Shown here piece by piece: positions 11,902-30,230 of a DNA stretch of 64,000 nucleotides (positions within the stretch are counted from its first letter, which is position 1; the number at the start of each line of letters is the position of its first letter). The notes beneath the pieces were generated by a model. The model was given only the letters and a program-made list of their open reading frames with translations. It did not search any database and was not told the origin of the DNA. Both the position numbers and the translations under genes were made by a program. The stretch is from IMG/VR virus record IMGVR_UViG_3300033571_009404, positions 186,001 to 250,000 of that record. One strand, 5' to 3'.

Positions 11902-12034
11902 TGTAAAAGTTTACAGTGCTGTATATGTTATGCAGAGACTTGCTATCTCTGTAGGGGCCAATGCCAGTCATTGTCTGTCAAATCTCTAGGGATCCTATGA
12001 CTTATATTTAATATATAGGAGTTATTACATAGGG

Positions 12035-12292
12035 TATACTACACTCCTTTAGAGAGTGTAGAGTAGTGACGACTGAGTGGAGTGTAACGTAACAAAGGAG
12101 GAGTGTACTGAATTGATCAGACACTCTAAGAGACTCTACAGATGTAATGAAACGAAGATAGCTAGCATTGAAGGGTAGGAAGAAAACTCTCTATGAGAAG
12201 AATAGAGATGATAGAGACCTACTCTACAAAAACTCTTTTAGAAAAGATGACATATAACAGGAGAGTTTAAGTACTCTCCCTTTATGACGTCA
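12035..12292. repeat. Non-coding tract of short ACTCT/AGAG(T) direct and inverted repeats
   Basis: At least six ACTC(T/C) copies and several AGAG copies form small hairpins (e.g. TACACACTC-CTTTA-GAGAGTGTA; GGAGAG-TTTAAGTA-CTCTCC); no ORF. Confidence 0.5.
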
Positions 12293-12314
12293 GTTTACAA
12301 GAAAGGATAGAAAG

Positions 12315-25185: not shown

Positions 25186-25644
25186 ATGTTTGAACCACAT
25201 GGGTTAATTGTCCAGCATCCTTGTGTTTTGATTTCGTTGACCGATGCCATGCAGGTCTTAAGAGAAGCCATTGTTGACTTCAGAAATAAGAATCGACATC
25301 AAGCAGATTACAACTATCCAATTTGGCGAGATGGTGGTTTTGACACCATTCGTTTCTTTCAACTGATCGTGCGTTCAGCATTGGTTGGGGATAGTTTTCC
25401 AGTCGATGCCATGCAGGTGTTGGAAAACGCTGGGATGGATTACAACCTTGCTAAGGATGTCACAGTGACATTGGTGGATTTGATCCAAGGTAACATCATT
25501 GATCACTTCCCCAATTACAGCATCGAACAGATGTCGAAGTTTCACTTTGGTATCATGCCTCATGGCGATATGCATATCTTCCCTAACGGCATCCCGCCAG
25601 TGGCCAAAGGAGTAAACAATGCTGGCAGTGATTTTACCCTCTAG
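25186..25644 (+). CDS. Hypothetical protein, paralog cluster B
   Basis: 152 aa; terminal FHFGIMPHGDMHIFP. Confidence 0.7.
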   Translation: MFEPHGLIVQHPCVLISLTDAMQVLREAIVDFRNKNRHQADYNYPIWRDGGFDTIRFFQLIVRSALVGDSFPVDAMQVLENAGMDYNLAKDVTVTLVDLIQGNIIDHFPNYSIEQMSKFHFGIMPHGDMHIFPNGIPPVAKGVNNAGSDFTL

Positions 25645-26074
25645 TGAGATCATTAACTACTATCACAAATACGAGACAGTCTTCAGTTTCGTTAATGGTG
25701 GTGTTAAGGAATTGGTCAAACAACTTATCATGGTCTCTCATGGTTGGTATTACGACCATTTCTCAGATCTGCAAAAGACCGAGCAGTCCGTGCGTTTGAC
25801 AAATGAGCTGGTGGAACAGTACGAGAACTCCGTACATCGCCGGTACTTAGAAAACACACACTACCAGAATATGGATGTATCTCGCATGGTCGAACAGTTC
25901 ATCGATGAAATCGAAGACGCTGTTAATGCGATGATGAATCAGTATTTTGCAGGCGTACCTTACCAAGTCACTTCCTTTGCAGGGTGGTTAGGTTTAGAGG
26001 CGGTAGTGTATATGTCACCAGTAGGGGGTCAGAGTGTACAACATCCAACCCCAGTCCATTATAGTCTCTTTTAA
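25619..26074 (+). CDS. Hypothetical protein, paralog cluster B
   Basis: 151 aa, AAGGAG SD; terminal YQVTSFAGWLGLEAVVY. Confidence 0.7.
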   Translation: MLAVILPSSEIINYYHKYETVFSFVNGGVKELVKQLIMVSHGWYYDHFSDLQKTEQSVRLTNELVEQYENSVHRRYLENTHYQNMDVSRMVEQFIDEIEDAVNAMMNQYFAGVPYQVTSFAGWLGLEAVVYMSPVGGQSVQHPTPVHYSLF

Positions 26075-26447
26075 AGATGCCAATAACAAACTGAAATCCA
26101 GTTTCGTTGATCAGGAACTGCCCGCGCTTCCATTTGCATGGATAGCACGGGTGGTTTTTGATGTCATCTCTCACTATGGGCGTGGGAATTATGGCGCAGA
26201 AGAAATCGCAGCAATGTGCATGGAGATTGTAGATGATTGGTATATGCGAGTTGAAGTGGAAGAAGAAACAGGGGAAGTTTTTACAAACACACCTCTAGCT
26301 AATATGATACAACTGCGCGTCACCCAGTACCAAATAGCGGTGGAGAGCGAGTTGGATAATTTAGGATTATTCGTACATGGACGACTGCATTATCAGTTAA
26401 AGGAGTTTATTGATGAGGACACCGGAATTCTGGCCCTCCGGCAATGA
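26034..26447 (+). CDS. Hypothetical protein, paralog cluster B
   Basis: 137 aa, GTG start; LGLFVHGRLHYQL motif. Confidence 0.65.
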   Translation: MYNIQPQSIIVSFKDANNKLKSSFVDQELPALPFAWIARVVFDVISHYGRGNYGAEEIAAMCMEIVDDWYMRVEVEEETGEVFTNTPLANMIQLRVTQYQIAVESELDNLGLFVHGRLHYQLKEFIDEDTGILALRQ

Positions 26448-26847
26448 CTTTCAAAAGATCATTCTGGATACAGAGGCTGATGTAACCAGATTGCGCCATC
26501 ACTTGGCAATGGTTCAAGGACAACTAAAAGAAGATGAGATCTACGATGTATTGGTCGATGCAGCGATGTATGAATCGGGTGCAGAAGGTGAATTGGCTGT
26601 TGCCATGCATTACGACTATGGTAATGTAGAGGTACTCTTCAGCACTCCATTACAATGCGAAGATTTTTGTCTAACCATGGAGCGGTTAGGTAAGAGCATC
26701 ATTCGCCAATTAAAAGACTTAGGTCTTTACCAGAACGGCGCGTGTAATTACCGTTATGGCAACACATGTGGTAGTGACTTGGTGTTGTACTCTAACGAGT
26801 ACTACTTAAATCACATCACTATTCCCAACATCATGGAGTGTCAATGA
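26410..26847 (+). CDS. Hypothetical protein, paralog cluster B
   Basis: 145 aa, AAGGAG SD; LGLYQNGACNYRY motif. Confidence 0.7.
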   Translation: MMRTPEFWPSGNDFQKIILDTEADVTRLRHHLAMVQGQLKEDEIYDVLVDAAMYESGAEGELAVAMHYDYGNVEVLFSTPLQCEDFCLTMERLGKSIIRQLKDLGLYQNGACNYRYGNTCGSDLVLYSNEYYLNHITIPNIMECQ

Positions 26848-27218
26848 GTGAGACTGTAAACATCCCCAGACATGCGCTGGTGGAAGCAGCGGACTTGATC
26901 AATGAGTTCATGATCAGGATCGAGCATATCAAAAATCGCAATATTGCAGCGACAATGATGGTGCTCTTAATCTTCGATCAATTCAGTGATGGGAAGAATC
27001 CAAATACCTTCCCTGACACCTTCCCCAATTGGCAATCGTTCAATTGGGATTACAGTGACCAAGATAAGGCAATTATACGAAATGCAGGACTGGCTCTAGC
27101 GCACTCCCTCTACAATGAGCTAATGGCGCTAGGGCTAGTTCACCAGGGCCGTGTGCCCTACGTCACTAACAGAGTTGAAGCGAACAATTTGATCGTGCTC
27201 GACTACATGCCTTATTAG
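26838..27218 (+). CDS. Hypothetical protein, paralog cluster B
   Basis: 126 aa; LGLVHQGRVPYVT motif. Confidence 0.7.
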   Translation: MSMSETVNIPRHALVEAADLINEFMIRIEHIKNRNIAATMMVLLIFDQFSDGKNPNTFPDTFPNWQSFNWDYSDQDKAIIRNAGLALAHSLYNELMALGLVHQGRVPYVTNRVEANNLIVLDYMPY

Positions 27219-27226
27219 GAAACGCC

Positions 27227-27622
27227 ATGGCTGATTTTACTATCGGTAACACTTATAACTTCAAGTGCTACGCTCCAAGCATTCTGACCAGTGACTTCTC
27301 CAACGTGGTGGTCACGGACATTCTGTCGTATGCAACCGCTTCGCGTTTTCGTGAAGTAGCTGCAGTTCACGCACAGATCTATAATCAATTGCCTGATGGT
27401 ACGCCCAATCAGCCGCAGAAGTATCAATACCTGCAAGTGCAGTTCCCCAATGGTAAAACCGATATCATCGGTATTCCTTGGATTCGTTCTGACACTGTGC
27501 AGCTGGTTGACTCGGTCATCTTTGATGTCCAGATCCAAGGTCTGTCTTCGACTGACTACAACAAGATCAGTGCAGCGCTGAAACAAAACGGGATTACGAA
27601 CTTCACGATCAAGATCCTGTAA
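27227..27622 (+). CDS. Conserved phiKZ-like protein, putative SH3-like beta-barrel
   Basis: 131 aa, AGGA SD; YQYLQV...IIGIPWI pattern typical of the small conserved gene upstream of the DNA polymerase. Confidence 0.6.
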   Translation: MADFTIGNTYNFKCYAPSILTSDFSNVVVTDILSYATASRFREVAAVHAQIYNQLPDGTPNQPQKYQYLQVQFPNGKTDIIGIPWIRSDTVQLVDSVIFDVQIQGLSSTDYNKISAALKQNGITNFTIKIL

Positions 27623-27684
27623 TTGCATTAAGGCAACACTATTGTATGGTTTAGAAATAATTTACACAGCCATGTAATTATTTA

Positions 27685-28023
27685 GAGACTAACAAGGGCT
27701 GGCACAGTCCGGATTGCCGTTGAGACTTCGACCACCTCAATGGAACCTTCGCAAGAGGGATGGCCTTATAGACGTACCCGCTCCTACAGTACAACGGATC
27801 TGTTTACTCCTTTACACATTCCGTGGGATGAGACTGTGCACCGACAGCGATCTTTGGTTATCCTTTCCCAAGGGGAGCAACTGAGTGCTGCCATTTCGGT
27901 ACTGGGATACGTTCTATTTGGTAGTAAACTGTTTTCAGACGGTGTAATGCTCCAGTTATGGATTAACTCCCCATAACGACTCGGACCCCAGTCTTGGCGA
28001 AAGTCAGGGCTGGGGTCTTTTTT
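27685..28023 (+). ncRNA. Candidate structured non-coding RNA (~340 nt); ends approximate
   Basis: Promoter-like AAATAATTTAC at 27655-27665, at least eight stem-loops (including GCAA and GAAA tetraloops), and a strong terminator with a T-run at 27984-28023. The only ORF (78 aa) lacks an SD and coding character. Confidence 0.5.
27984..28023 (+). terminator. Intrinsic terminator
   Basis: GACCCCAGTC-T-TGGC-GAAA-GTCA-GGGCTGGGGTC followed by TTTTTT. Confidence 0.85.
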
Positions 28024-28094
28024 CCGTCACTTTTGTTTTTAAGTTTTTACCACCACCATAGATGTTACGTCTCGATGTAAAGGAGCATAACAAC

Positions 28095-30230
28095 ATGAGT
28101 GAGTTAAAGAGTCCATTTGTTCGAGAAGCTAACACGTATCGTCGTGATGTTAGCGTGCTCGAACAGTATAAAGAACAGACAGCCACCTACCTGTCGCTGA
28201 AGTTTGGCAAGCCCTACGAATGGTGCTTGGAATACGTCAAGAACAACATGAAACCAGATGGTGCATTTCCTTTCAAGGATCCGACTGCCTACTATCTGGA
28301 ACGTCAGCCTAATGGTGACCGTGAACCTAAGTCCGGTCCCATGTCGCAGTATCTGGACGAAGCGATTCGGTCTAAATCGCTCGTTGCAGCTACATTCACT
28401 ATTTACCATCCACCGTCCCGTGTGCGATCGTATCTGGTGGACTTCATTGATGAAAACGTCAAGAAGCGCGGTGTAGCAAAGAAGGCTATGTTTAAAGCCG
28501 AGATGGCTGGTGACAAAGTCTTGCAAGCCATTAAGAAAGCCGAACAGAATAACAAGAAAACCAACAACAACTCGATTTCTGGTGGACATGCACAGGCATC
28601 CACACCGCTCTACAATAAGACATCCCATAGTACCCTGACGTCAACCTGCCGTAGTACCTCAGGTTATGGCAATGCCAATAATGAAAAGCTGCTCTCTGGC
28701 AATCGGCATTATTGGTCTCCTCACATTGTGCGCAATAACATCATCTCCATTATTACCTTGGTGGATATGGATGACATGCAGCGCACCATGGAAAAGTTTG
28801 GCATGCGTTACCCCACAGTTGATGAGATGATGGAAACCATCAAGTTCTCAACAGATCTGTACTGGTGGAGTGATATAGAGATGGCTAATATTCGTGAACT
28901 GGTAGAAAAGTTAACTCCAGTGCAACGTGCAGCTTTCGTTTATGTGGGCGACTTCCACCACATTGCCAAATACAATCATGACATGTTCAAGAAGTTCTTG
29001 GACAAGCTCACCACCGTGTCGACGGAAGCACTGCCTGACCACATCGACTACATGAAGACTACGGTAGAAGAATACCGTAACTTAGCTGTTCTGATGCATC
29101 CAGAAATCACCAAGGGTCTGAATGCACAACAGTTAGAAGCTAATCCCGACTTCTCCATTGTTGCCGGGACCGCTAAGAATATTGAGAACGTACTGGAAGA
29201 GTACCGAGACTTCATCAACACTATCTGCATGTCGAGGGTAGTTCCTGCGTCTCTGGCTTCTTTCCCTGACTCCATTCGTCGTAGCGCATTAACGTCAGAC
29301 ACTGACTCGACCATCTTTACCGTACAAGACTGGGTGCAATGGCACCGTGGCTATATGGGTGTGGATAAGCCGACTAATGCGACTGCGGACGCAATGGTGT
29401 TCTTAGCAGCACAATCGATCATTCACGTGTTAGCGCGTATGTCCGCTAACTTTGGCATTGAAGACAGTCGTCTGTTTAAGATCGCCATGAAAAACGAGTT
29501 TAAGTTCGATGTGTTCGTACCGACTCAGCTGGCTAAGCACTACTTTGCATTGATCAGTTCTCAAGAGGGTAACCTCTTTAAGGACTTCAAGGAAGAGATT
29601 AAGGGCGTCCACTTAAAGTCTTCTAACGTACCTAAGCGTATTGTCAAACAAGCGCAAGGGATGATGCGTCGGATCATGGACGACACCATGTCTGGCAAGA
29701 AGATTAAGTTGCTCAATTACCTGAAGGAAGTGGGTGATGTGGAGCGCGGTATCTTTGAATCGATCAAGCACGGTAGTTATGAATATTTCCGTGTGACCCA
29801 AATCAAGCAGGAATCCAGCTATGGTAAAACCGGCATGGAATCCAACTATTGGCATTACCTGATGTGGCAGGAAGTCTGGGCACCTAAGTATGGTGATACT
29901 GCACCCCCGCCGTTCATGGCTGTCAAATTGTCGATTGGTCTGAATAGCCCAACTAAGCTCAAAGCTTGGATTGAGTCTTTTGAAGATCGTGAATTGGCAG
30001 ACCGCTTGACTAAGTTCATGGCCAAATCAAAACGCGATAAGCTTTCCCTGATGTGGTTACCAGAGCAGTGCATTGCTGGTGCAGCCGGTATTCCTCCTGA
30101 GATCTTGTCTCAAGTGGATACCCGTAAGATCGTATTTGATACTGCGGCTATCTTCTACAAGGTATTGGAATGCTTGGGCTATTATTCTGAAACCAAGAAA
30201 CACGTCAAGCTGGTTAGCGACTATCATTAA
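28095..30230 (+). CDS. Split family-B DNA polymerase, polymerase-domain subunit (phiKZ gp50-like)
   Basis: Motif B-like KKTNNNSISG, motif C TSDTDS and HLKSSN; AAGGAG SD before ATG 28095. Confidence 0.88.
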   Translation: MSELKSPFVREANTYRRDVSVLEQYKEQTATYLSLKFGKPYEWCLEYVKNNMKPDGAFPFKDPTAYYLERQPNGDREPKSGPMSQYLDEAIRSKSLVAATFTIYHPPSRVRSYLVDFIDENVKKRGVAKKAMFKAEMAGDKVLQAIKKAEQNNKKTNNNSISGGHAQASTPLYNKTSHSTLTSTCRSTSGYGNANNEKLLSGNRHYWSPHIVRNNIISIITLVDMDDMQRTMEKFGMRYPTVDEMMETIKFSTDLYWWSDIEMANIRELVEKLTPVQRAAFVYVGDFHHIAKYNHDMFKKFLDKLTTVSTEALPDHIDYMKTTVEEYRNLAVLMHPEITKGLNAQQLEANPDFSIVAGTAKNIENVLEEYRDFINTICMSRVVPASLASFPDSIRRSALTSDTDSTIFTVQDWVQWHRGYMGVDKPTNATADAMVFLAAQSIIHVLARMSANFGIEDSRLFKIAMKNEFKFDVFVPTQLAKHYFALISSQEGNLFKDFKEEIKGVHLKSSNVPKRIVKQAQGMMRRIMDDTMSGKKIKLLNYLKEVGDVERGIFESIKHGSYEYFRVTQIKQESSYGKTGMESNYWHYLMWQEVWAPKYGDTAPPPFMAVKLSIGLNSPTKLKAWIESFEDRELADRLTKFMAKSKRDKLSLMWLPEQCIAGAAGIPPEILSQVDTRKIVFDTAAIFYKVLECLGYYSETKKHVKLVSDYH

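What the first reader, a model, noticed from the sequence alone, without database searches (positions are those of the whole stretch)
27685..28023. Candidate ~340-nt structured non-coding RNA with its own promoter and terminator, just upstream of the DNA polymerase
Seen, in an otherwise gene-dense region, consecutive stems: GGGCT/AGTCC (27696-27710), CCGTTGAG/CTCAATGG (27717-27743), CCTTC-GCAA-GAGGG (27746-27759) and CATTC/GGATG (27817-27830). A multi-way junction closed by TATCCT/GGGATA (27859-27909) has three short arms. Then follow ACTGT/ACGGT (27928-27943), GTTATGG/CCATAAC (27955-27977) and a GAAA-capped terminator with a T6 run. G-U pairs and GNRA loops favour a + strand RNA; a promoter-like motif lies at 27655. 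Inference: an unannotated phage ncRNA (decoy, scaffold for ChmC or the shell, ribozyme) or an attenuating leader for the polymerase. I do not recognise it as a known Rfam family.
Basis: partly seen in the sequence, partly recalled or inferred. Interest (0 to 1): 0.8.

Follow-up and report, generated by a model that had tools for sequence, protein, structure and literature searches.

The report
Conserved structured RNA in jumbo phages
The gap before this jumbo phage's DNA polymerase gene holds a folded, non-protein-coding RNA of about 375 bases; it belongs to an undescribed RNA family shared by many nucleus-forming-type phages and its function is unknown.

Summary
The finding is real, but its boundaries and part of its fold need correcting. 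The 472-nt gap lies between the SH3DP gene (27227-27622) and the divergent family-B DNA polymerase gene (start 28095). It encodes a + strand structured RNA of roughly 27648-28023.

- **Stems.** The CATTC/GGATG stem and the TATCCT/GGGATA junction closure do not.
- **Covariation.** Three closer relatives, found through the SH3DP protein, carry the same gene-free gap. A covariance model finds them (E about 1e-26 and 1e-6). In the four-sequence alignment 93% of cells pair and 32 of 65 pairs change on both sides (shuffles 11.2 ± 2.7; slid controls 3-11). G-U pairs fix the strand as +.
- **Family.** About 25 further phage contigs, plus the cultured phages Burkholderia FLC9 and Ralstonia RP12, have an equivalent unannotated RNA at the same place, with no conserved ORF and no Rfam match.
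- **Hallmark.** Several hairpins are capped by pyrimidine-rich, anti-Shine-Dalgarno-like loops with a UCCUU core.
- **Weak points.** The folding energy of the body alone is not significant, expression is almost untested, and the function is inferred.

Best guess: a trans-acting multivalent RNA that binds purine-rich ribosome-binding sites or a protein.

The parts
27227..27622 (+). Context: upstream gene. It encodes an SH3DP protein, the homologue of phiKZ gp49, which is a baseplate ring protein in phiKZ.
   Evidence: Pfam PF20287, E = 2e-37. A profile search of the PDB hits PHIKZ049 and an 'SH3 fold domain-containing protein'. The baseplate HR1 role of gp49 is from PMC13250141.
27640..27649 (+). 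Candidate phage-type promoter or start region, TATTGTATGG. A TATG motif sits at the equivalent place in relatives, with a family-wide form T(A/G)TG(C/T)AGA(G/A).
   Evidence: Sequence. TATG is aligned in L201 and L204 but not in L203. The motif lies at the 5' edge of the gap in many relatives and in RP12. No sigma-70 match on the + strand. No transcription start was measured.
27655..27683 (+). P0, a 5' hairpin (27655-66 with 27673-83). A possible outer extension pairs 27647-52 with 27686-91.
   Evidence: Local folds of the window, L201 and L204. The stem sequence differs in L203 and L204 while the hairpin is kept.
27696..27710 (+). P1 hairpin with a UGGCA-type loop, followed by the conserved linker GGAUUGC (27711-17). 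Together they form the family's 5' signature.
   Evidence: p 0.97. The fourth pair is C-G, U-A or U-G among relatives. The pattern AAGGG-N9-13-YCYGGWTYGC occurs once in the window (0 in 100 shuffles) and only at the syntenic site in relatives. A model built without the window puts its best window hit here.
27717..27743 (+). P2 hairpin, 8 bp. Its loop is ACUUCGACCAC. In L203, L204 and most of the wider family the P2 loop is pyrimidine-rich (e.g. GUUCCUUUAC, UAUCCUUU, UUUUUACCUCC).
   Evidence: p 0.99. 6 of its 7 pairs change on both sides (helix 3). Local folds. A natural variant in run X5, C27718T, turns a C-G pair into U-G.
27746..27759 (+). P3 hairpin with a GCAA loop. Conserved GAAC lies before it and AUGGCC after it.
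   Evidence: p 0.98. A hairpin with a different stem sequence sits at this place in L201, L203 and L204.
27768..27917 (+). P4, a long-range helix (27768-79 with 27904-17) that closes the central domain. An inner helix P4' pairs 27789-92 with 27899-902.
   Evidence: p 0.89-0.99. Compensatory changes in L201, L203 and L204 (rows P4b-d; helices 6 and 7). The same helix, with related sequence, is present in L016.
27794..27824 (+). P5 hairpin (27794-98/27820-24 and 27801-03/27816-18). Its loop is UUACUCCUUUAC (27804-15) and is anti-Shine-Dalgarno-like.
   Evidence: helices 8 and 9. The loop core A(C/U)UCCUU is kept in all four sequences while the stems change. Mean unpaired probability 0.71.
27825..27897 (+). 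P6, a long irregular hairpin: 27825-32/27891-97, 27838-42/27883-88 and 27847-57/27868-78. It is capped by the loop UUAUCCUUUC (27858-67).
   Evidence: helices 10-12 (helix 12 has 6 pairs changed on both sides). In the window alone this fold is 1.2 kcal/mol above the minimum-energy fold. The loop core UCCUUUC is conserved.
27928..27977 (+). 3' hairpins P8 (27928-33/27938-43) and P9 (27955-61/27971-77, loop AUUAACUCC). P9 is a variable region and is missing in L201 and L204.
   Evidence: p 0.87 and 0.99. Alignment.
27983..28023 (+). Intrinsic terminator: 16-bp stem, GAAA loop and U6.
   Evidence: The stem covaries in L201 and L203 (row T). On the - strand no T-run follows the stem, so it works on the + strand only.
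28024..28094 (+). Context: spacer after the terminator. It holds CCGTCA (compare the TATGCCGTC module of relatives), a conserved ATACGTCTCG block, and the polymerase ribosome-binding site AAGGAG (28080-85).
28095..30230 (+). Context: divergent family-B DNA polymerase, the homologue of phiKZ gp50 / DNAP-C.
   Evidence: Pfam PF20286, E = 2e-244. Closest cultured relative is FLC9 at 53% identity. PMC13648687.

Best explanation
**What it is (shown).** The gap between the SH3DP gene and the DNA polymerase gene encodes a + strand structured non-coding RNA of about 375 nt, roughly 27648-28023, ended by a strong intrinsic terminator.
- It is a diverged member of an undescribed RNA family that sits at this syntenic spot in a large clade of chimallivirus-like jumbo phages.
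- Its fold is: a 5' hairpin P0; the signature hairpin P1 plus GGAUUGC; hairpins P2 and P3; a long-range helix P4 closing a junction that carries P5 and the long hairpin P6; variable 3' hairpins; and the terminator.
- Stems covary, while the apical loops of P5 and P6 (and of P2 in most relatives) keep a pyrimidine-rich UCCUU/CCUCC core.

**How it most likely works (inferred).**
- It is released as a discrete RNA and acts in trans.
- Its two to four exposed loops resemble the anti-Shine-Dalgarno end of 16S rRNA. They would serve as multivalent sites that pair with GGAG-type ribosome-binding regions of mRNAs.
- That pairing would damp or time translation during infection.

**Confidence by part.** About 0.85 that this is a real conserved structured RNA. 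About 0.3 that the loops act by pairing with ribosome-binding sites.
For: **Synteny without coding.**
- The gap is 430-850 nt in about 30 contigs whose polymerase is 44-55% identical, with no shared ORF.
- No gene is called in the gap of L201, L203 or L204.

**Homology.**
- Model R2 (window plus L201) finds L203 at 87.9 bits, E = 2e-26, and L204 at 23.9 bits, E = 6e-6.
- Model R3 finds L021 (E = 4e-4), L042 (E = 0.007), L016 (E = 0.045) and L014 (E = 0.25). All four are at the syntenic gap on the + strand, and nothing else in 316 kb scores E <= 5.
- Model R1, built without the window, puts its best window hit at 27694-27756 (E = 0.014).
- The P1 signature is unique in the window.

**Covariation.**
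- Window subfamily: 93.3% of cells paired against 78.2 ± 1.8 in shuffles. 32 pairs change on both sides against 11.2 ± 2.7 (0 of 500 shuffles reach it) and 3-11 in slid controls.
- FLC9 subgroup: 27 of 92 pairs compensatory against 2-6 in slid controls.

**Strand.**
- 94.5% canonical pairs with 30 G-U cells on the + strand, against 82.3% on the - strand.
- The FLC9 group gives 96.7% against 84.9%.
- A natural C27718T variant gives a U-G pair.

**Loops.**
- Pyrimidine-rich hairpin loops number 20 in 23 family members, against 5.9 ± 2.1 (largest 12) in dinucleotide shuffles. Only 1 purine-rich loop is seen.
- TCCTCC occurs in 10 sequences against 1 for its reverse complement, and CCTCCT in 9 against 0.
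- Loop cores are conserved while the stems change.
- The P5 loop is complementary to the common UAAAGGAG ribosome-binding context of this phage's genes.

**Independence from the polymerase gene.** In RP12 and L081 the RNA is not adjacent to it.

**Expression (weak).** The only contig of a wastewater RNA-seq run that lies on the 1.3-kb stretch covers 27740-27884, inside the RNA.
Against: - **Energy.** Without the terminator the window's fold is no more stable than shuffles (z = -0.88 and -0.67).
- **Weak loop display in the window.** By a strict test on its minimum-energy fold it has no pyrimidine-rich loop. Its P2 loop is not CU-rich, and P6 is only the second-best fold for the single sequence.
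- **Alignment bias.** The covariation alignment has four sequences, was fitted to a model derived from two of them, and so leans towards that structure (tool caveat).
- **Partial link to the wider family.** FLC9 and RP12 were not hit by R3. Their link to the window rests on synteny, architecture and intermediates.
- **No target.** The loops do not match their own polymerase ribosome-binding site better than those of other phages (permutation p = 0.24). Anti-Shine-Dalgarno-like loops would also bind the phage's own mRNAs.
- **Expression.** No transcript ends are known, and the tool itself marks the one RNA-seq run as 'probably DNA'.
- **Promoter.** An own promoter is not shown. L203 has no room for one.
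Confidence: 0.45

Rival explanations
1. Protein sponge or scaffold. The same conserved pyrimidine-rich loops are binding sites for a protein rather than for mRNA. Candidates are host S1, Hfq or cold-shock proteins, or a phage RNA-binding protein such as ChmC. The RNA would titrate or organise that protein, as CsrB/RsmZ do for CsrA and CrcZ does for Hfq.
For: - There are several similar loops per molecule, with the loop sequence conserved while the stems covary. This is the usual design of protein sponges.
- The negative co-evolution test with the polymerase ribosome-binding site fits a non-mRNA ligand.
Against: - No partner was identified.
- The neighbouring SH3DP protein, which I considered as a partner, is a baseplate protein in phiKZ.
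- Nothing in the sequence separates protein binding from RNA binding.
Confidence: 0.25
2. Cis-acting element. Either a structured 3' UTR that ends and stabilises the SH3DP (late structural) transcript, or a long leader whose terminator attenuates transcription into the polymerase gene.
For: - No terminator lies between the SH3DP stop and the RNA, so read-through transcripts must contain it.
- L203 has no room for a separate promoter.
- The layout of structured region, terminator and gene resembles attenuators.
Against: - In RP12 a terminator-like hairpin and a TATG motif precede the RNA, and another gene follows it.
- In L081 about 600 nt separate the RNA from the polymerase gene.
- The terminators are long, near-perfect stems, and I saw no conserved alternative (antiterminator) pairing when inspecting the window and L201.
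- A conserved block follows the terminator, and in most of the wider family a TATGCCG motif does too, so the polymerase gene may have its own start signal.
- A multi-helix junction with conserved loops is more than a stabiliser needs.
Confidence: 0.15
3. Small protein gene. The 78-aa ORF 27740-27976 is the functional product.
For: - The ORF exists.
Against: - No Shine-Dalgarno sequence precedes its ATG.
- No Pfam or PHROG match.
- No tblastn match in any related locus.
- Relatives have no ORF, or unrelated ORFs, in the gap, and no gene is called there in L201, L203 or L204.
- The substitution pattern follows base pairs, not codons.
Confidence: 0.02
4. Chance structure in a spacer that only carries a terminator and promoters.
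For: - The body's folding energy is not better than shuffles.
Against: - Covariation, strand asymmetry, model hits in relatives and conserved loops.
Confidence: 0.03

Closest known systems
Multi-hairpin regulatory RNAs with C-rich loops that pair with Shine-Dalgarno regions (Staphylococcus aureus RNAIII hairpins 7, 13 and 14; RsaE/RoxS). Comparison from my own knowledge.
   Same: A long, independently terminated RNA with several hairpins. Their pyrimidine-rich apical loops are complementary to GGAG-type ribosome-binding sites. This is the closest functional analogy.
   Different: There is no sequence or Rfam relationship. This RNA is phage-encoded, in jumbo phages of Gram-negative hosts. Its loop core is UCCUU/CCUCC rather than UCCC. 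No target pairing is shown.
Protein-sponge RNAs CsrB/CsrC, RsmY/RsmZ and CrcZ. Comparison from my own knowledge.
   Same: Repeated short motifs displayed in many hairpin loops of one RNA.
   Different: Those RNAs display GGA or A-rich motifs. Here GGA would appear only on the - strand, which G-U pairs and the terminator exclude. No Rfam match.
Conserved 5'-UTR-derived sRNA upstream of the tail gene (phiKZ gp182 / 201phi2-1 gp277) in giant Pseudomonas phages (PMC11512511).
   Same: A non-coding RNA conserved by genomic position among chimalliviruses. Shows that such phages make small RNAs.
   Different: Different locus, much shorter (under 250 nt), and defined from transcript ends. phiKZ-type phages have only about 120 nt between their gp49 and gp50 homologues and lack the present RNA.
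Large structured RNAs of phages and prophages, GOLLD and ROOL (Rfam). Comparison from my own knowledge.
   Same: Large, highly structured, phage-associated RNAs of unknown function, found by comparative analysis.
   Different: No match to their models. This RNA is smaller and has a different architecture.
ColE1 RNA II and phage T4/T7 origin transcripts (primer RNAs). Comparison from my own knowledge.
   Same: A structured transcript of several hundred nucleotides next to replication functions. Chimalliviruses lack a known primase (PMC7824862, PMC13648687).
   Different: This RNA ends in a strong intrinsic terminator. There is no GC-skew turn at the site, and no evidence of an RNA-DNA hybrid or an origin.

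Membership tests
Any Rfam 15 family, including tmRNA, RNase P, 6S, group I/II introns, riboswitches, GOLLD and ROOL | Covariance-model score at or above the family's gathering threshold | tested here: not met
   No match in the window or in 16 related loci. At E up to 10 there are only three chance-level miRNA/snoRNA matches.
tRNA / tmRNA | ARAGORN detection | tested here: not met
   No tRNA or tmRNA gene in the whole window.
New family: RNA in the SH3DP-polymerase gap of chimallivirus-like phages | Syntenic position downstream of the SH3DP gene, on its strand, with no conserved ORF | tested here: met
New family: RNA in the SH3DP-polymerase gap of chimallivirus-like phages | 5' signature: AAGGG, the P1 hairpin, then CCGGAUYGC, followed by P2 and GAAC | tested here: met
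   The pattern is unique in the window and sits at the syntenic site in relatives. Model R1, built without the window, has its top hit at 27694-27756, E = 0.014. R3 hits L021, L042 and L016 at that domain.
New family: RNA in the SH3DP-polymerase gap of chimallivirus-like phages | Helices supported by compensatory changes on the + strand | tested here: met
   window subfamily; FLC9 subgroup. Caveats: few sequences, and an alignment fitted to the model.
New family: RNA in the SH3DP-polymerase gap of chimallivirus-like phages | Two or more hairpins capped by pyrimidine-rich loops with a UCCUU/CCUCC core | tested here: met
   Family-wide enrichment. In the window these are P5 (27804-15) and P6 (27858-67) in the comparative fold. 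The strict test on the window's minimum-energy fold finds none, so the window is a weak example.
Independently transcribed sRNA | Own promoter and primary 5' end; intrinsic terminator | tested here: inconclusive
   The terminator is met. The promoter is only a TATG-type motif at 27645-48, shared with L201 and L204 but not L203. No transcript ends are available.
Transcription attenuator / riboswitch leader of the polymerase gene | Conserved alternative pairing that competes with the terminator; fixed linkage to the regulated gene | tested here: not met
   The linkage is broken in RP12 and L081. I saw no conserved antiterminator when inspecting the window and L201; this was not an exhaustive search.
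RNAIII-type anti-Shine-Dalgarno regulator (membership by mechanism) | Loops pair with the ribosome-binding sites of defined target mRNAs | not testable with these tools
   Complementarity to generic GGAG sites exists, but there is no specificity (p = 0.24).
CsrB/RsmZ-type sponge | GGA motifs in the loops of the transcribed strand | tested here: not met
   The transcribed strand shows UCC, not GGA. The - strand is excluded by G-U pairs, folding and the terminator.
Small protein gene | ORF conserved in relatives, with a ribosome-binding site | tested here: not met

The most novel reading that the evidence does not exclude
The RNA is the missing priming or origin element of chimallivirus replication. 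These phages have a polymerase and an RNase H-clamp protein but no known primase. A structured transcript made by the phage RNA polymerase next to the polymerase gene would hybridise to DNA, perhaps through its pyrimidine-rich loops on purine-rich template, and be processed into a primer, in the manner of ColE1 RNA II. Only its position and the absence of a primase speak for this. The strong terminator, the absence of a GC-skew turn and the RNA's absence from phiKZ-type phages speak against it.
Probability: 0.04. Interest if true: 0.95.

Novelty: new variant of a known kind. Interest (0 to 1): 0.66.

Why it matters
**Gap in knowledge.** Nucleus-forming jumbo phages are a major model for phage cell biology and for escape from DNA-targeting defences, yet almost nothing is known about their non-coding RNAs.

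**What is new.**
- A structured RNA of 300-450 nt is kept at one genomic spot across phages whose polymerases are only 44-55% identical. I found it in no RNA library or paper I could search.
- Its conserved anti-Shine-Dalgarno-like loops point to a role in translation control or in titrating a host or phage factor. These are the questions now being asked about how such phages take over ribosomes from behind a protein shell.

**Why it is testable.** Two cultured phages, Ralstonia RP12 and Burkholderia FLC9, carry members, so the idea can be tested directly at the bench.

**What remains if the mechanism is wrong.** The family still offers a new comparative handle on transcription-unit boundaries in these genomes, namely the TATG start motif and the hairpin-plus-TATGCCG module.

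Tried and rejected
1. **DNA search of the phage collection.** Nucleotide search with the region found nothing. The window's phage, IMG/VR contig UViG_3300033571_009404, has no close cultured relative.
2. **MAFFT on full-length RNAs of distant members.** The alignment failed. On the closer relatives MAFFT shifted P2, P3 and part of P4, so pair counts on that alignment understate the structure. Structure-aware MAFFT was not installed. I used covariance-model alignment instead.
3. **Co-evolution of the loops with the polymerase ribosome-binding site.** A 10-nt match in the window looked striking. Across 24 loci, however, cognate pairs match no better than non-cognate pairs (mean 6.88 against 6.70, p = 0.24). 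Rejected as evidence.
4. **Pairing with a second candidate RNA at 11929-12292.** Duplex energy is no better than shuffles.
5. **Collection scan with the P1 pattern.** It gave mostly chance hits and one true new member, L097.
6. **A simple scan for pyrimidine-loop hairpins in the window.** About 55 chance-like hits; uninformative.
7. **SH3DP as an RNA-binding partner.**
   - I considered a MazF-like or Sm-like role for the neighbouring protein.
   - Its homologues are solved as the baseplate ring protein gp49 of phiKZ, so the idea was dropped.
8. **Replication origin.** There is no GC-skew turn at the site.
9. **RNA-seq.** Only one short contig from one metatranscriptome, which the tool marks as probably DNA.
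Full report
**Setting.**
- The window is part of a 310-kb metagenomic phage contig, IMG/VR UViG_3300033571_009404.
- The finding lies in a 472-nt gap between two + strand genes.
  - Upstream, 27227-27622 encodes a Pfam SH3DP protein (PF20287, E = 2e-37).
  - Downstream is the divergent family-B DNA polymerase (PF20286, E = 2e-244). Its likely start is the ATG at 28095, behind AAGGAG at 28080-85.
- These are the homologues of phiKZ gp49 and gp50. gp50 is the DNAP-C subunit (PMC13648687). gp49 is a baseplate ring protein in the phiKZ virion (PMC13250141; PDB matches).
- The nearest cultured relative of the polymerase is Burkholderia phage FLC9, at 53% identity. A tubulin (PhuZ-type) gene lies nearby in relative L203. 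This fits a chimallivirus-like, nucleus-forming phage.

**Check of the observation.**
  - P1, 27696-27710
  - P2, 27717-27743
  - P3, 27746-27759, with a GCAA loop
  - the hairpins at 27928-43 and 27955-77
  - a 16-bp GAAA-capped terminator with six U, 27983-28023
- Two proposals fail. The CATTC/GGATG stem and the TATCCT/GGGATA closure of the junction appear in neither the minimum-energy fold nor the comparative fold.
  - z is -3.85 with the terminator.
  - z is -0.88 or -0.67 without it.
  - The - strand gives z = +0.2.
- Energy alone would therefore not have carried the claim.

**The gap is conserved as a gap.**
- In about 30 viral and metagenomic contigs whose polymerase is 44-55% identical, the same two genes are separated by 430-850 nt.
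- phiKZ-type contigs have only about 120 nt there.
- The gaps share no ORF, and some have no ORF of 35 codons at all.
- The window's 78-aa ORF has no ribosome-binding site, no family match, and no counterpart in any relative.
- FLC9 has an unannotated 536-nt gap at this place. In Ralstonia phage RP12 the element lies in an unannotated 437-nt gap between ORF005 and ORF004, with extra genes inserted on both sides.

**A structured RNA in the FLC9 subgroup.**
- Six sequences align over the whole gap, with invariant blocks and variable stems.
- RNAalifold predicts 92 pairs: 96.7% of cells are canonical and 27 pairs show compensatory changes.
- When the 3' partners are slid by 1-3 columns, only 2-6 pairs do so and 38-47% of cells pair.
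- Read on the - strand, the same pairs drop to 84.9% canonical, because 70 G-U cells become A-C.

**Covariation for the window's own RNA.**
- No contig in the two collections was close enough to align with the window.
- A protein search with SH3DP then found three closer relatives, at 69%, 68% and 53% identity.
- Their contigs, L201, L203 and L204, have the same gene order and a gene-free gap of 433-455 nt.
- A covariance model built from the window plus L201 finds L203 at 87.9 bits (E about 1e-26) and L204 at 23.9 bits (E about 1e-6), both full length.
- On the resulting four-sequence alignment:

| Measure | Observed | 500 shuffles | Slid controls |
|---|---|---|---|
| Cells that form a standard pair | 93.3% | 78.2 ± 1.8% | 38-47% |
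| Pairs changed on both sides (of 65) | 32 | 11.2 ± 2.7 | 3-11 |

- No shuffle reaches either observed value.
- The + strand gives 94.5% canonical pairs with 30 G-U cells, against 82.3% on the - strand. The alifold energy is -43.3 against -26.9.
- Caveats: there are only four sequences, and the alignment was fitted to a structure derived from two of them.
- A near-identical natural variant (run X5) has one change in the RNA, C27718T. It turns a P2 C-G pair into U-G.

**Corrected anatomy, in window coordinates.**

| Element | Coordinates | Note |
|---|---|---|
| TATG motif | 27645-48 | candidate start region |
| P0 | 27655-66 / 27673-83 | 5' hairpin |
| P1 | 27696-27710 | followed by GGAUUGC |
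| P2 | 27717-24 / 27736-43 | |
| GAAC | between P2 and P3 | conserved, single-stranded |
| P3 | 27746-50 / 27755-59 | |
| P4 | 27768-79 / 27904-17 | long-range helix |
| P4' | 27789-92 / 27899-902 | inner helix |
| P5 | 27794-98 / 27820-24 | loop UUACUCCUUUAC |
| P6 | 27825-57 / 27868-97 | long hairpin, loop UUAUCCUUUC (27858-67) |
| P8, P9 | 27928-43, 27955-77 | variable 3' hairpins |
| Terminator | 27983-28023 | |

- For the window alone, the P6 fold is 1.2 kcal/mol above the minimum-energy fold. The relatives decide in favour of P6 (helix 12).

**Link to the wider family.**
- The pattern AAGGG-N9-13-YCYGGWTYGC occurs once in the window (none in 100 shuffles). In the loci it occurs only at the syntenic site of L016, L021, L025, L081 and their duplicates.
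- A small model built without the window puts its best hit in the 64-kb window, both strands, at 27694-27756 (E = 0.014).
- The four-sequence model R3 finds L021 (E = 4e-4), L042 (E = 0.007), L016 (E = 0.045) and L014 (E = 0.25). All are at the syntenic gap on the + strand, and nothing else in 316 kb scores E <= 5.
- Helix P4 of L016 has a related sequence, with compensatory differences.
- FLC9 and RP12 are not reached by R3. They are joined to the window through shared architecture and intermediate members.

**The hallmark.**
- Across 23 members, minimum-energy folds contain 20 hairpin loops that are at least 80% pyrimidine with a CC or CUC core.
- Dinucleotide shuffles give 5.9 ± 2.1 (largest 12). 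Only one purine-rich loop is seen.
- TCCTCC and CCTCCT are strongly strand-biased.
- In both well-aligned subgroups the loop cores are conserved while the stems vary. The cores are UUUCCUCCUUGUUU in the FLC9 group, and A(C/U)UCCUU and UCCUUUC in the window's group.
- These cores resemble the CCUCCUU of the 16S rRNA 3' end (established knowledge) and are complementary to GGAG-type ribosome-binding sites. That includes the UAAAGGAG context common in this phage.
- The window is a weak example: two loops in the comparative fold, and none by the strict single-sequence test.

**Mechanism.**
- Shown: a conserved + strand structure, a terminator, and conserved pyrimidine-rich loops.
- Inferred: the RNA is released and acts in trans through these loops.
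  - I rank pairing with ribosome-binding regions first. The analogy is with the C-rich loops of RNAIII-type RNAs.
  - Protein titration comes second.
  - Cis roles come third, because the link to the polymerase gene is broken in RP12 and L081.
- No specific target emerged.
- An own promoter is plausible: a TATG motif here, T(A/G)TG(C/T)AGA in many relatives, and a preceding terminator-like hairpin in RP12. It is not shown, and L203 leaves no room for one.
- Expression evidence is one 156-nt contig from a wastewater RNA-seq run. It lies wholly inside the RNA (27740-27884) while the flanks are absent, but the tool marks the run as probably DNA.

**Literature.**
- I found no description of this RNA.
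- The known conserved sRNA of giant Pseudomonas phages lies upstream of a tail gene (PMC11512511).
- A 2026 review only notes that phiKZ expresses non-coding RNAs (PMC13282480).
- A catalogue of candidate viral structured RNAs does not mention jumbo phages or this locus (PMC10690425).
- Chimalliviruses lack a known primase (PMC7824862; PMC13648687). This is what makes the low-probability primer reading worth stating.

**Verdict.** This is a real, previously undescribed structured RNA family, and the window holds a diverged member of it. The boundaries and the central junction needed correcting. The function is open.

Noticed in passing
window 11929-12292 (+), in the 413-nt gap 11902-12314: A second candidate non-coding unit. 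It begins with the TATGCAGAGA motif and ends with a hairpin plus UUUAUGACGUC. It has no ORF longer than 38 codons, and its fold has z = -3.65 including that hairpin. It is purine-rich and holds AAAGGAGGAG. Model R1's third-best window hit falls here (E = 0.21). Duplex energy with the main RNA is no better than shuffles.
   Followed up: partly
window 21846 (-), 47431 (-), 10650 (-) / 10677 (+), 23999 (+); also after the terminators in most related loci: A GC-rich hairpin followed directly by TTATGCCGTC-like sequence recurs through the genome and across relatives. It looks like a combined terminator and TATG-start module. In the window's own RNA the motif is reduced to TTTTTTCCGTCA.
   Followed up: partly
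window 25186-27218 (+): A run of five tightly packed or overlapping genes of 126-152 codons with no Pfam or PHROG match. Runs of genes of similar size lie at the same place in L201, L203, L204 and FLC9.
   Followed up: no
window 28062 versus 28095: The longest polymerase ORF starts at 28062. The ATG at 28095, which follows AAGGAG at 28080-85, matches the start of the homologues and is the likely true start.
   Followed up: yes
window 27227-27622: Pfam names this protein an 'SH3 fold domain associated with phage DNA polymerases'. Its phiKZ homologue gp49 is now solved as a baseplate hexagonal-ring protein. The gene pairing therefore probably marks a boundary between a structural and a replication transcription unit rather than a polymerase subunit.
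   Followed up: partly
window 27718, 28035, 28262, 28265 (run X5): A biofilm metagenome holds a near-identical strain. It has three substitutions and one inserted T in 793 nt. The only change inside the RNA keeps a base pair as U-G.
   Followed up: yes
L097 495-756 (-), contig of 323,678 nt: A further jumbo-phage contig, found by the P1 pattern, with a shorter version of the RNA (about 260 nt) directly upstream of its polymerase gene.
   Followed up: partly
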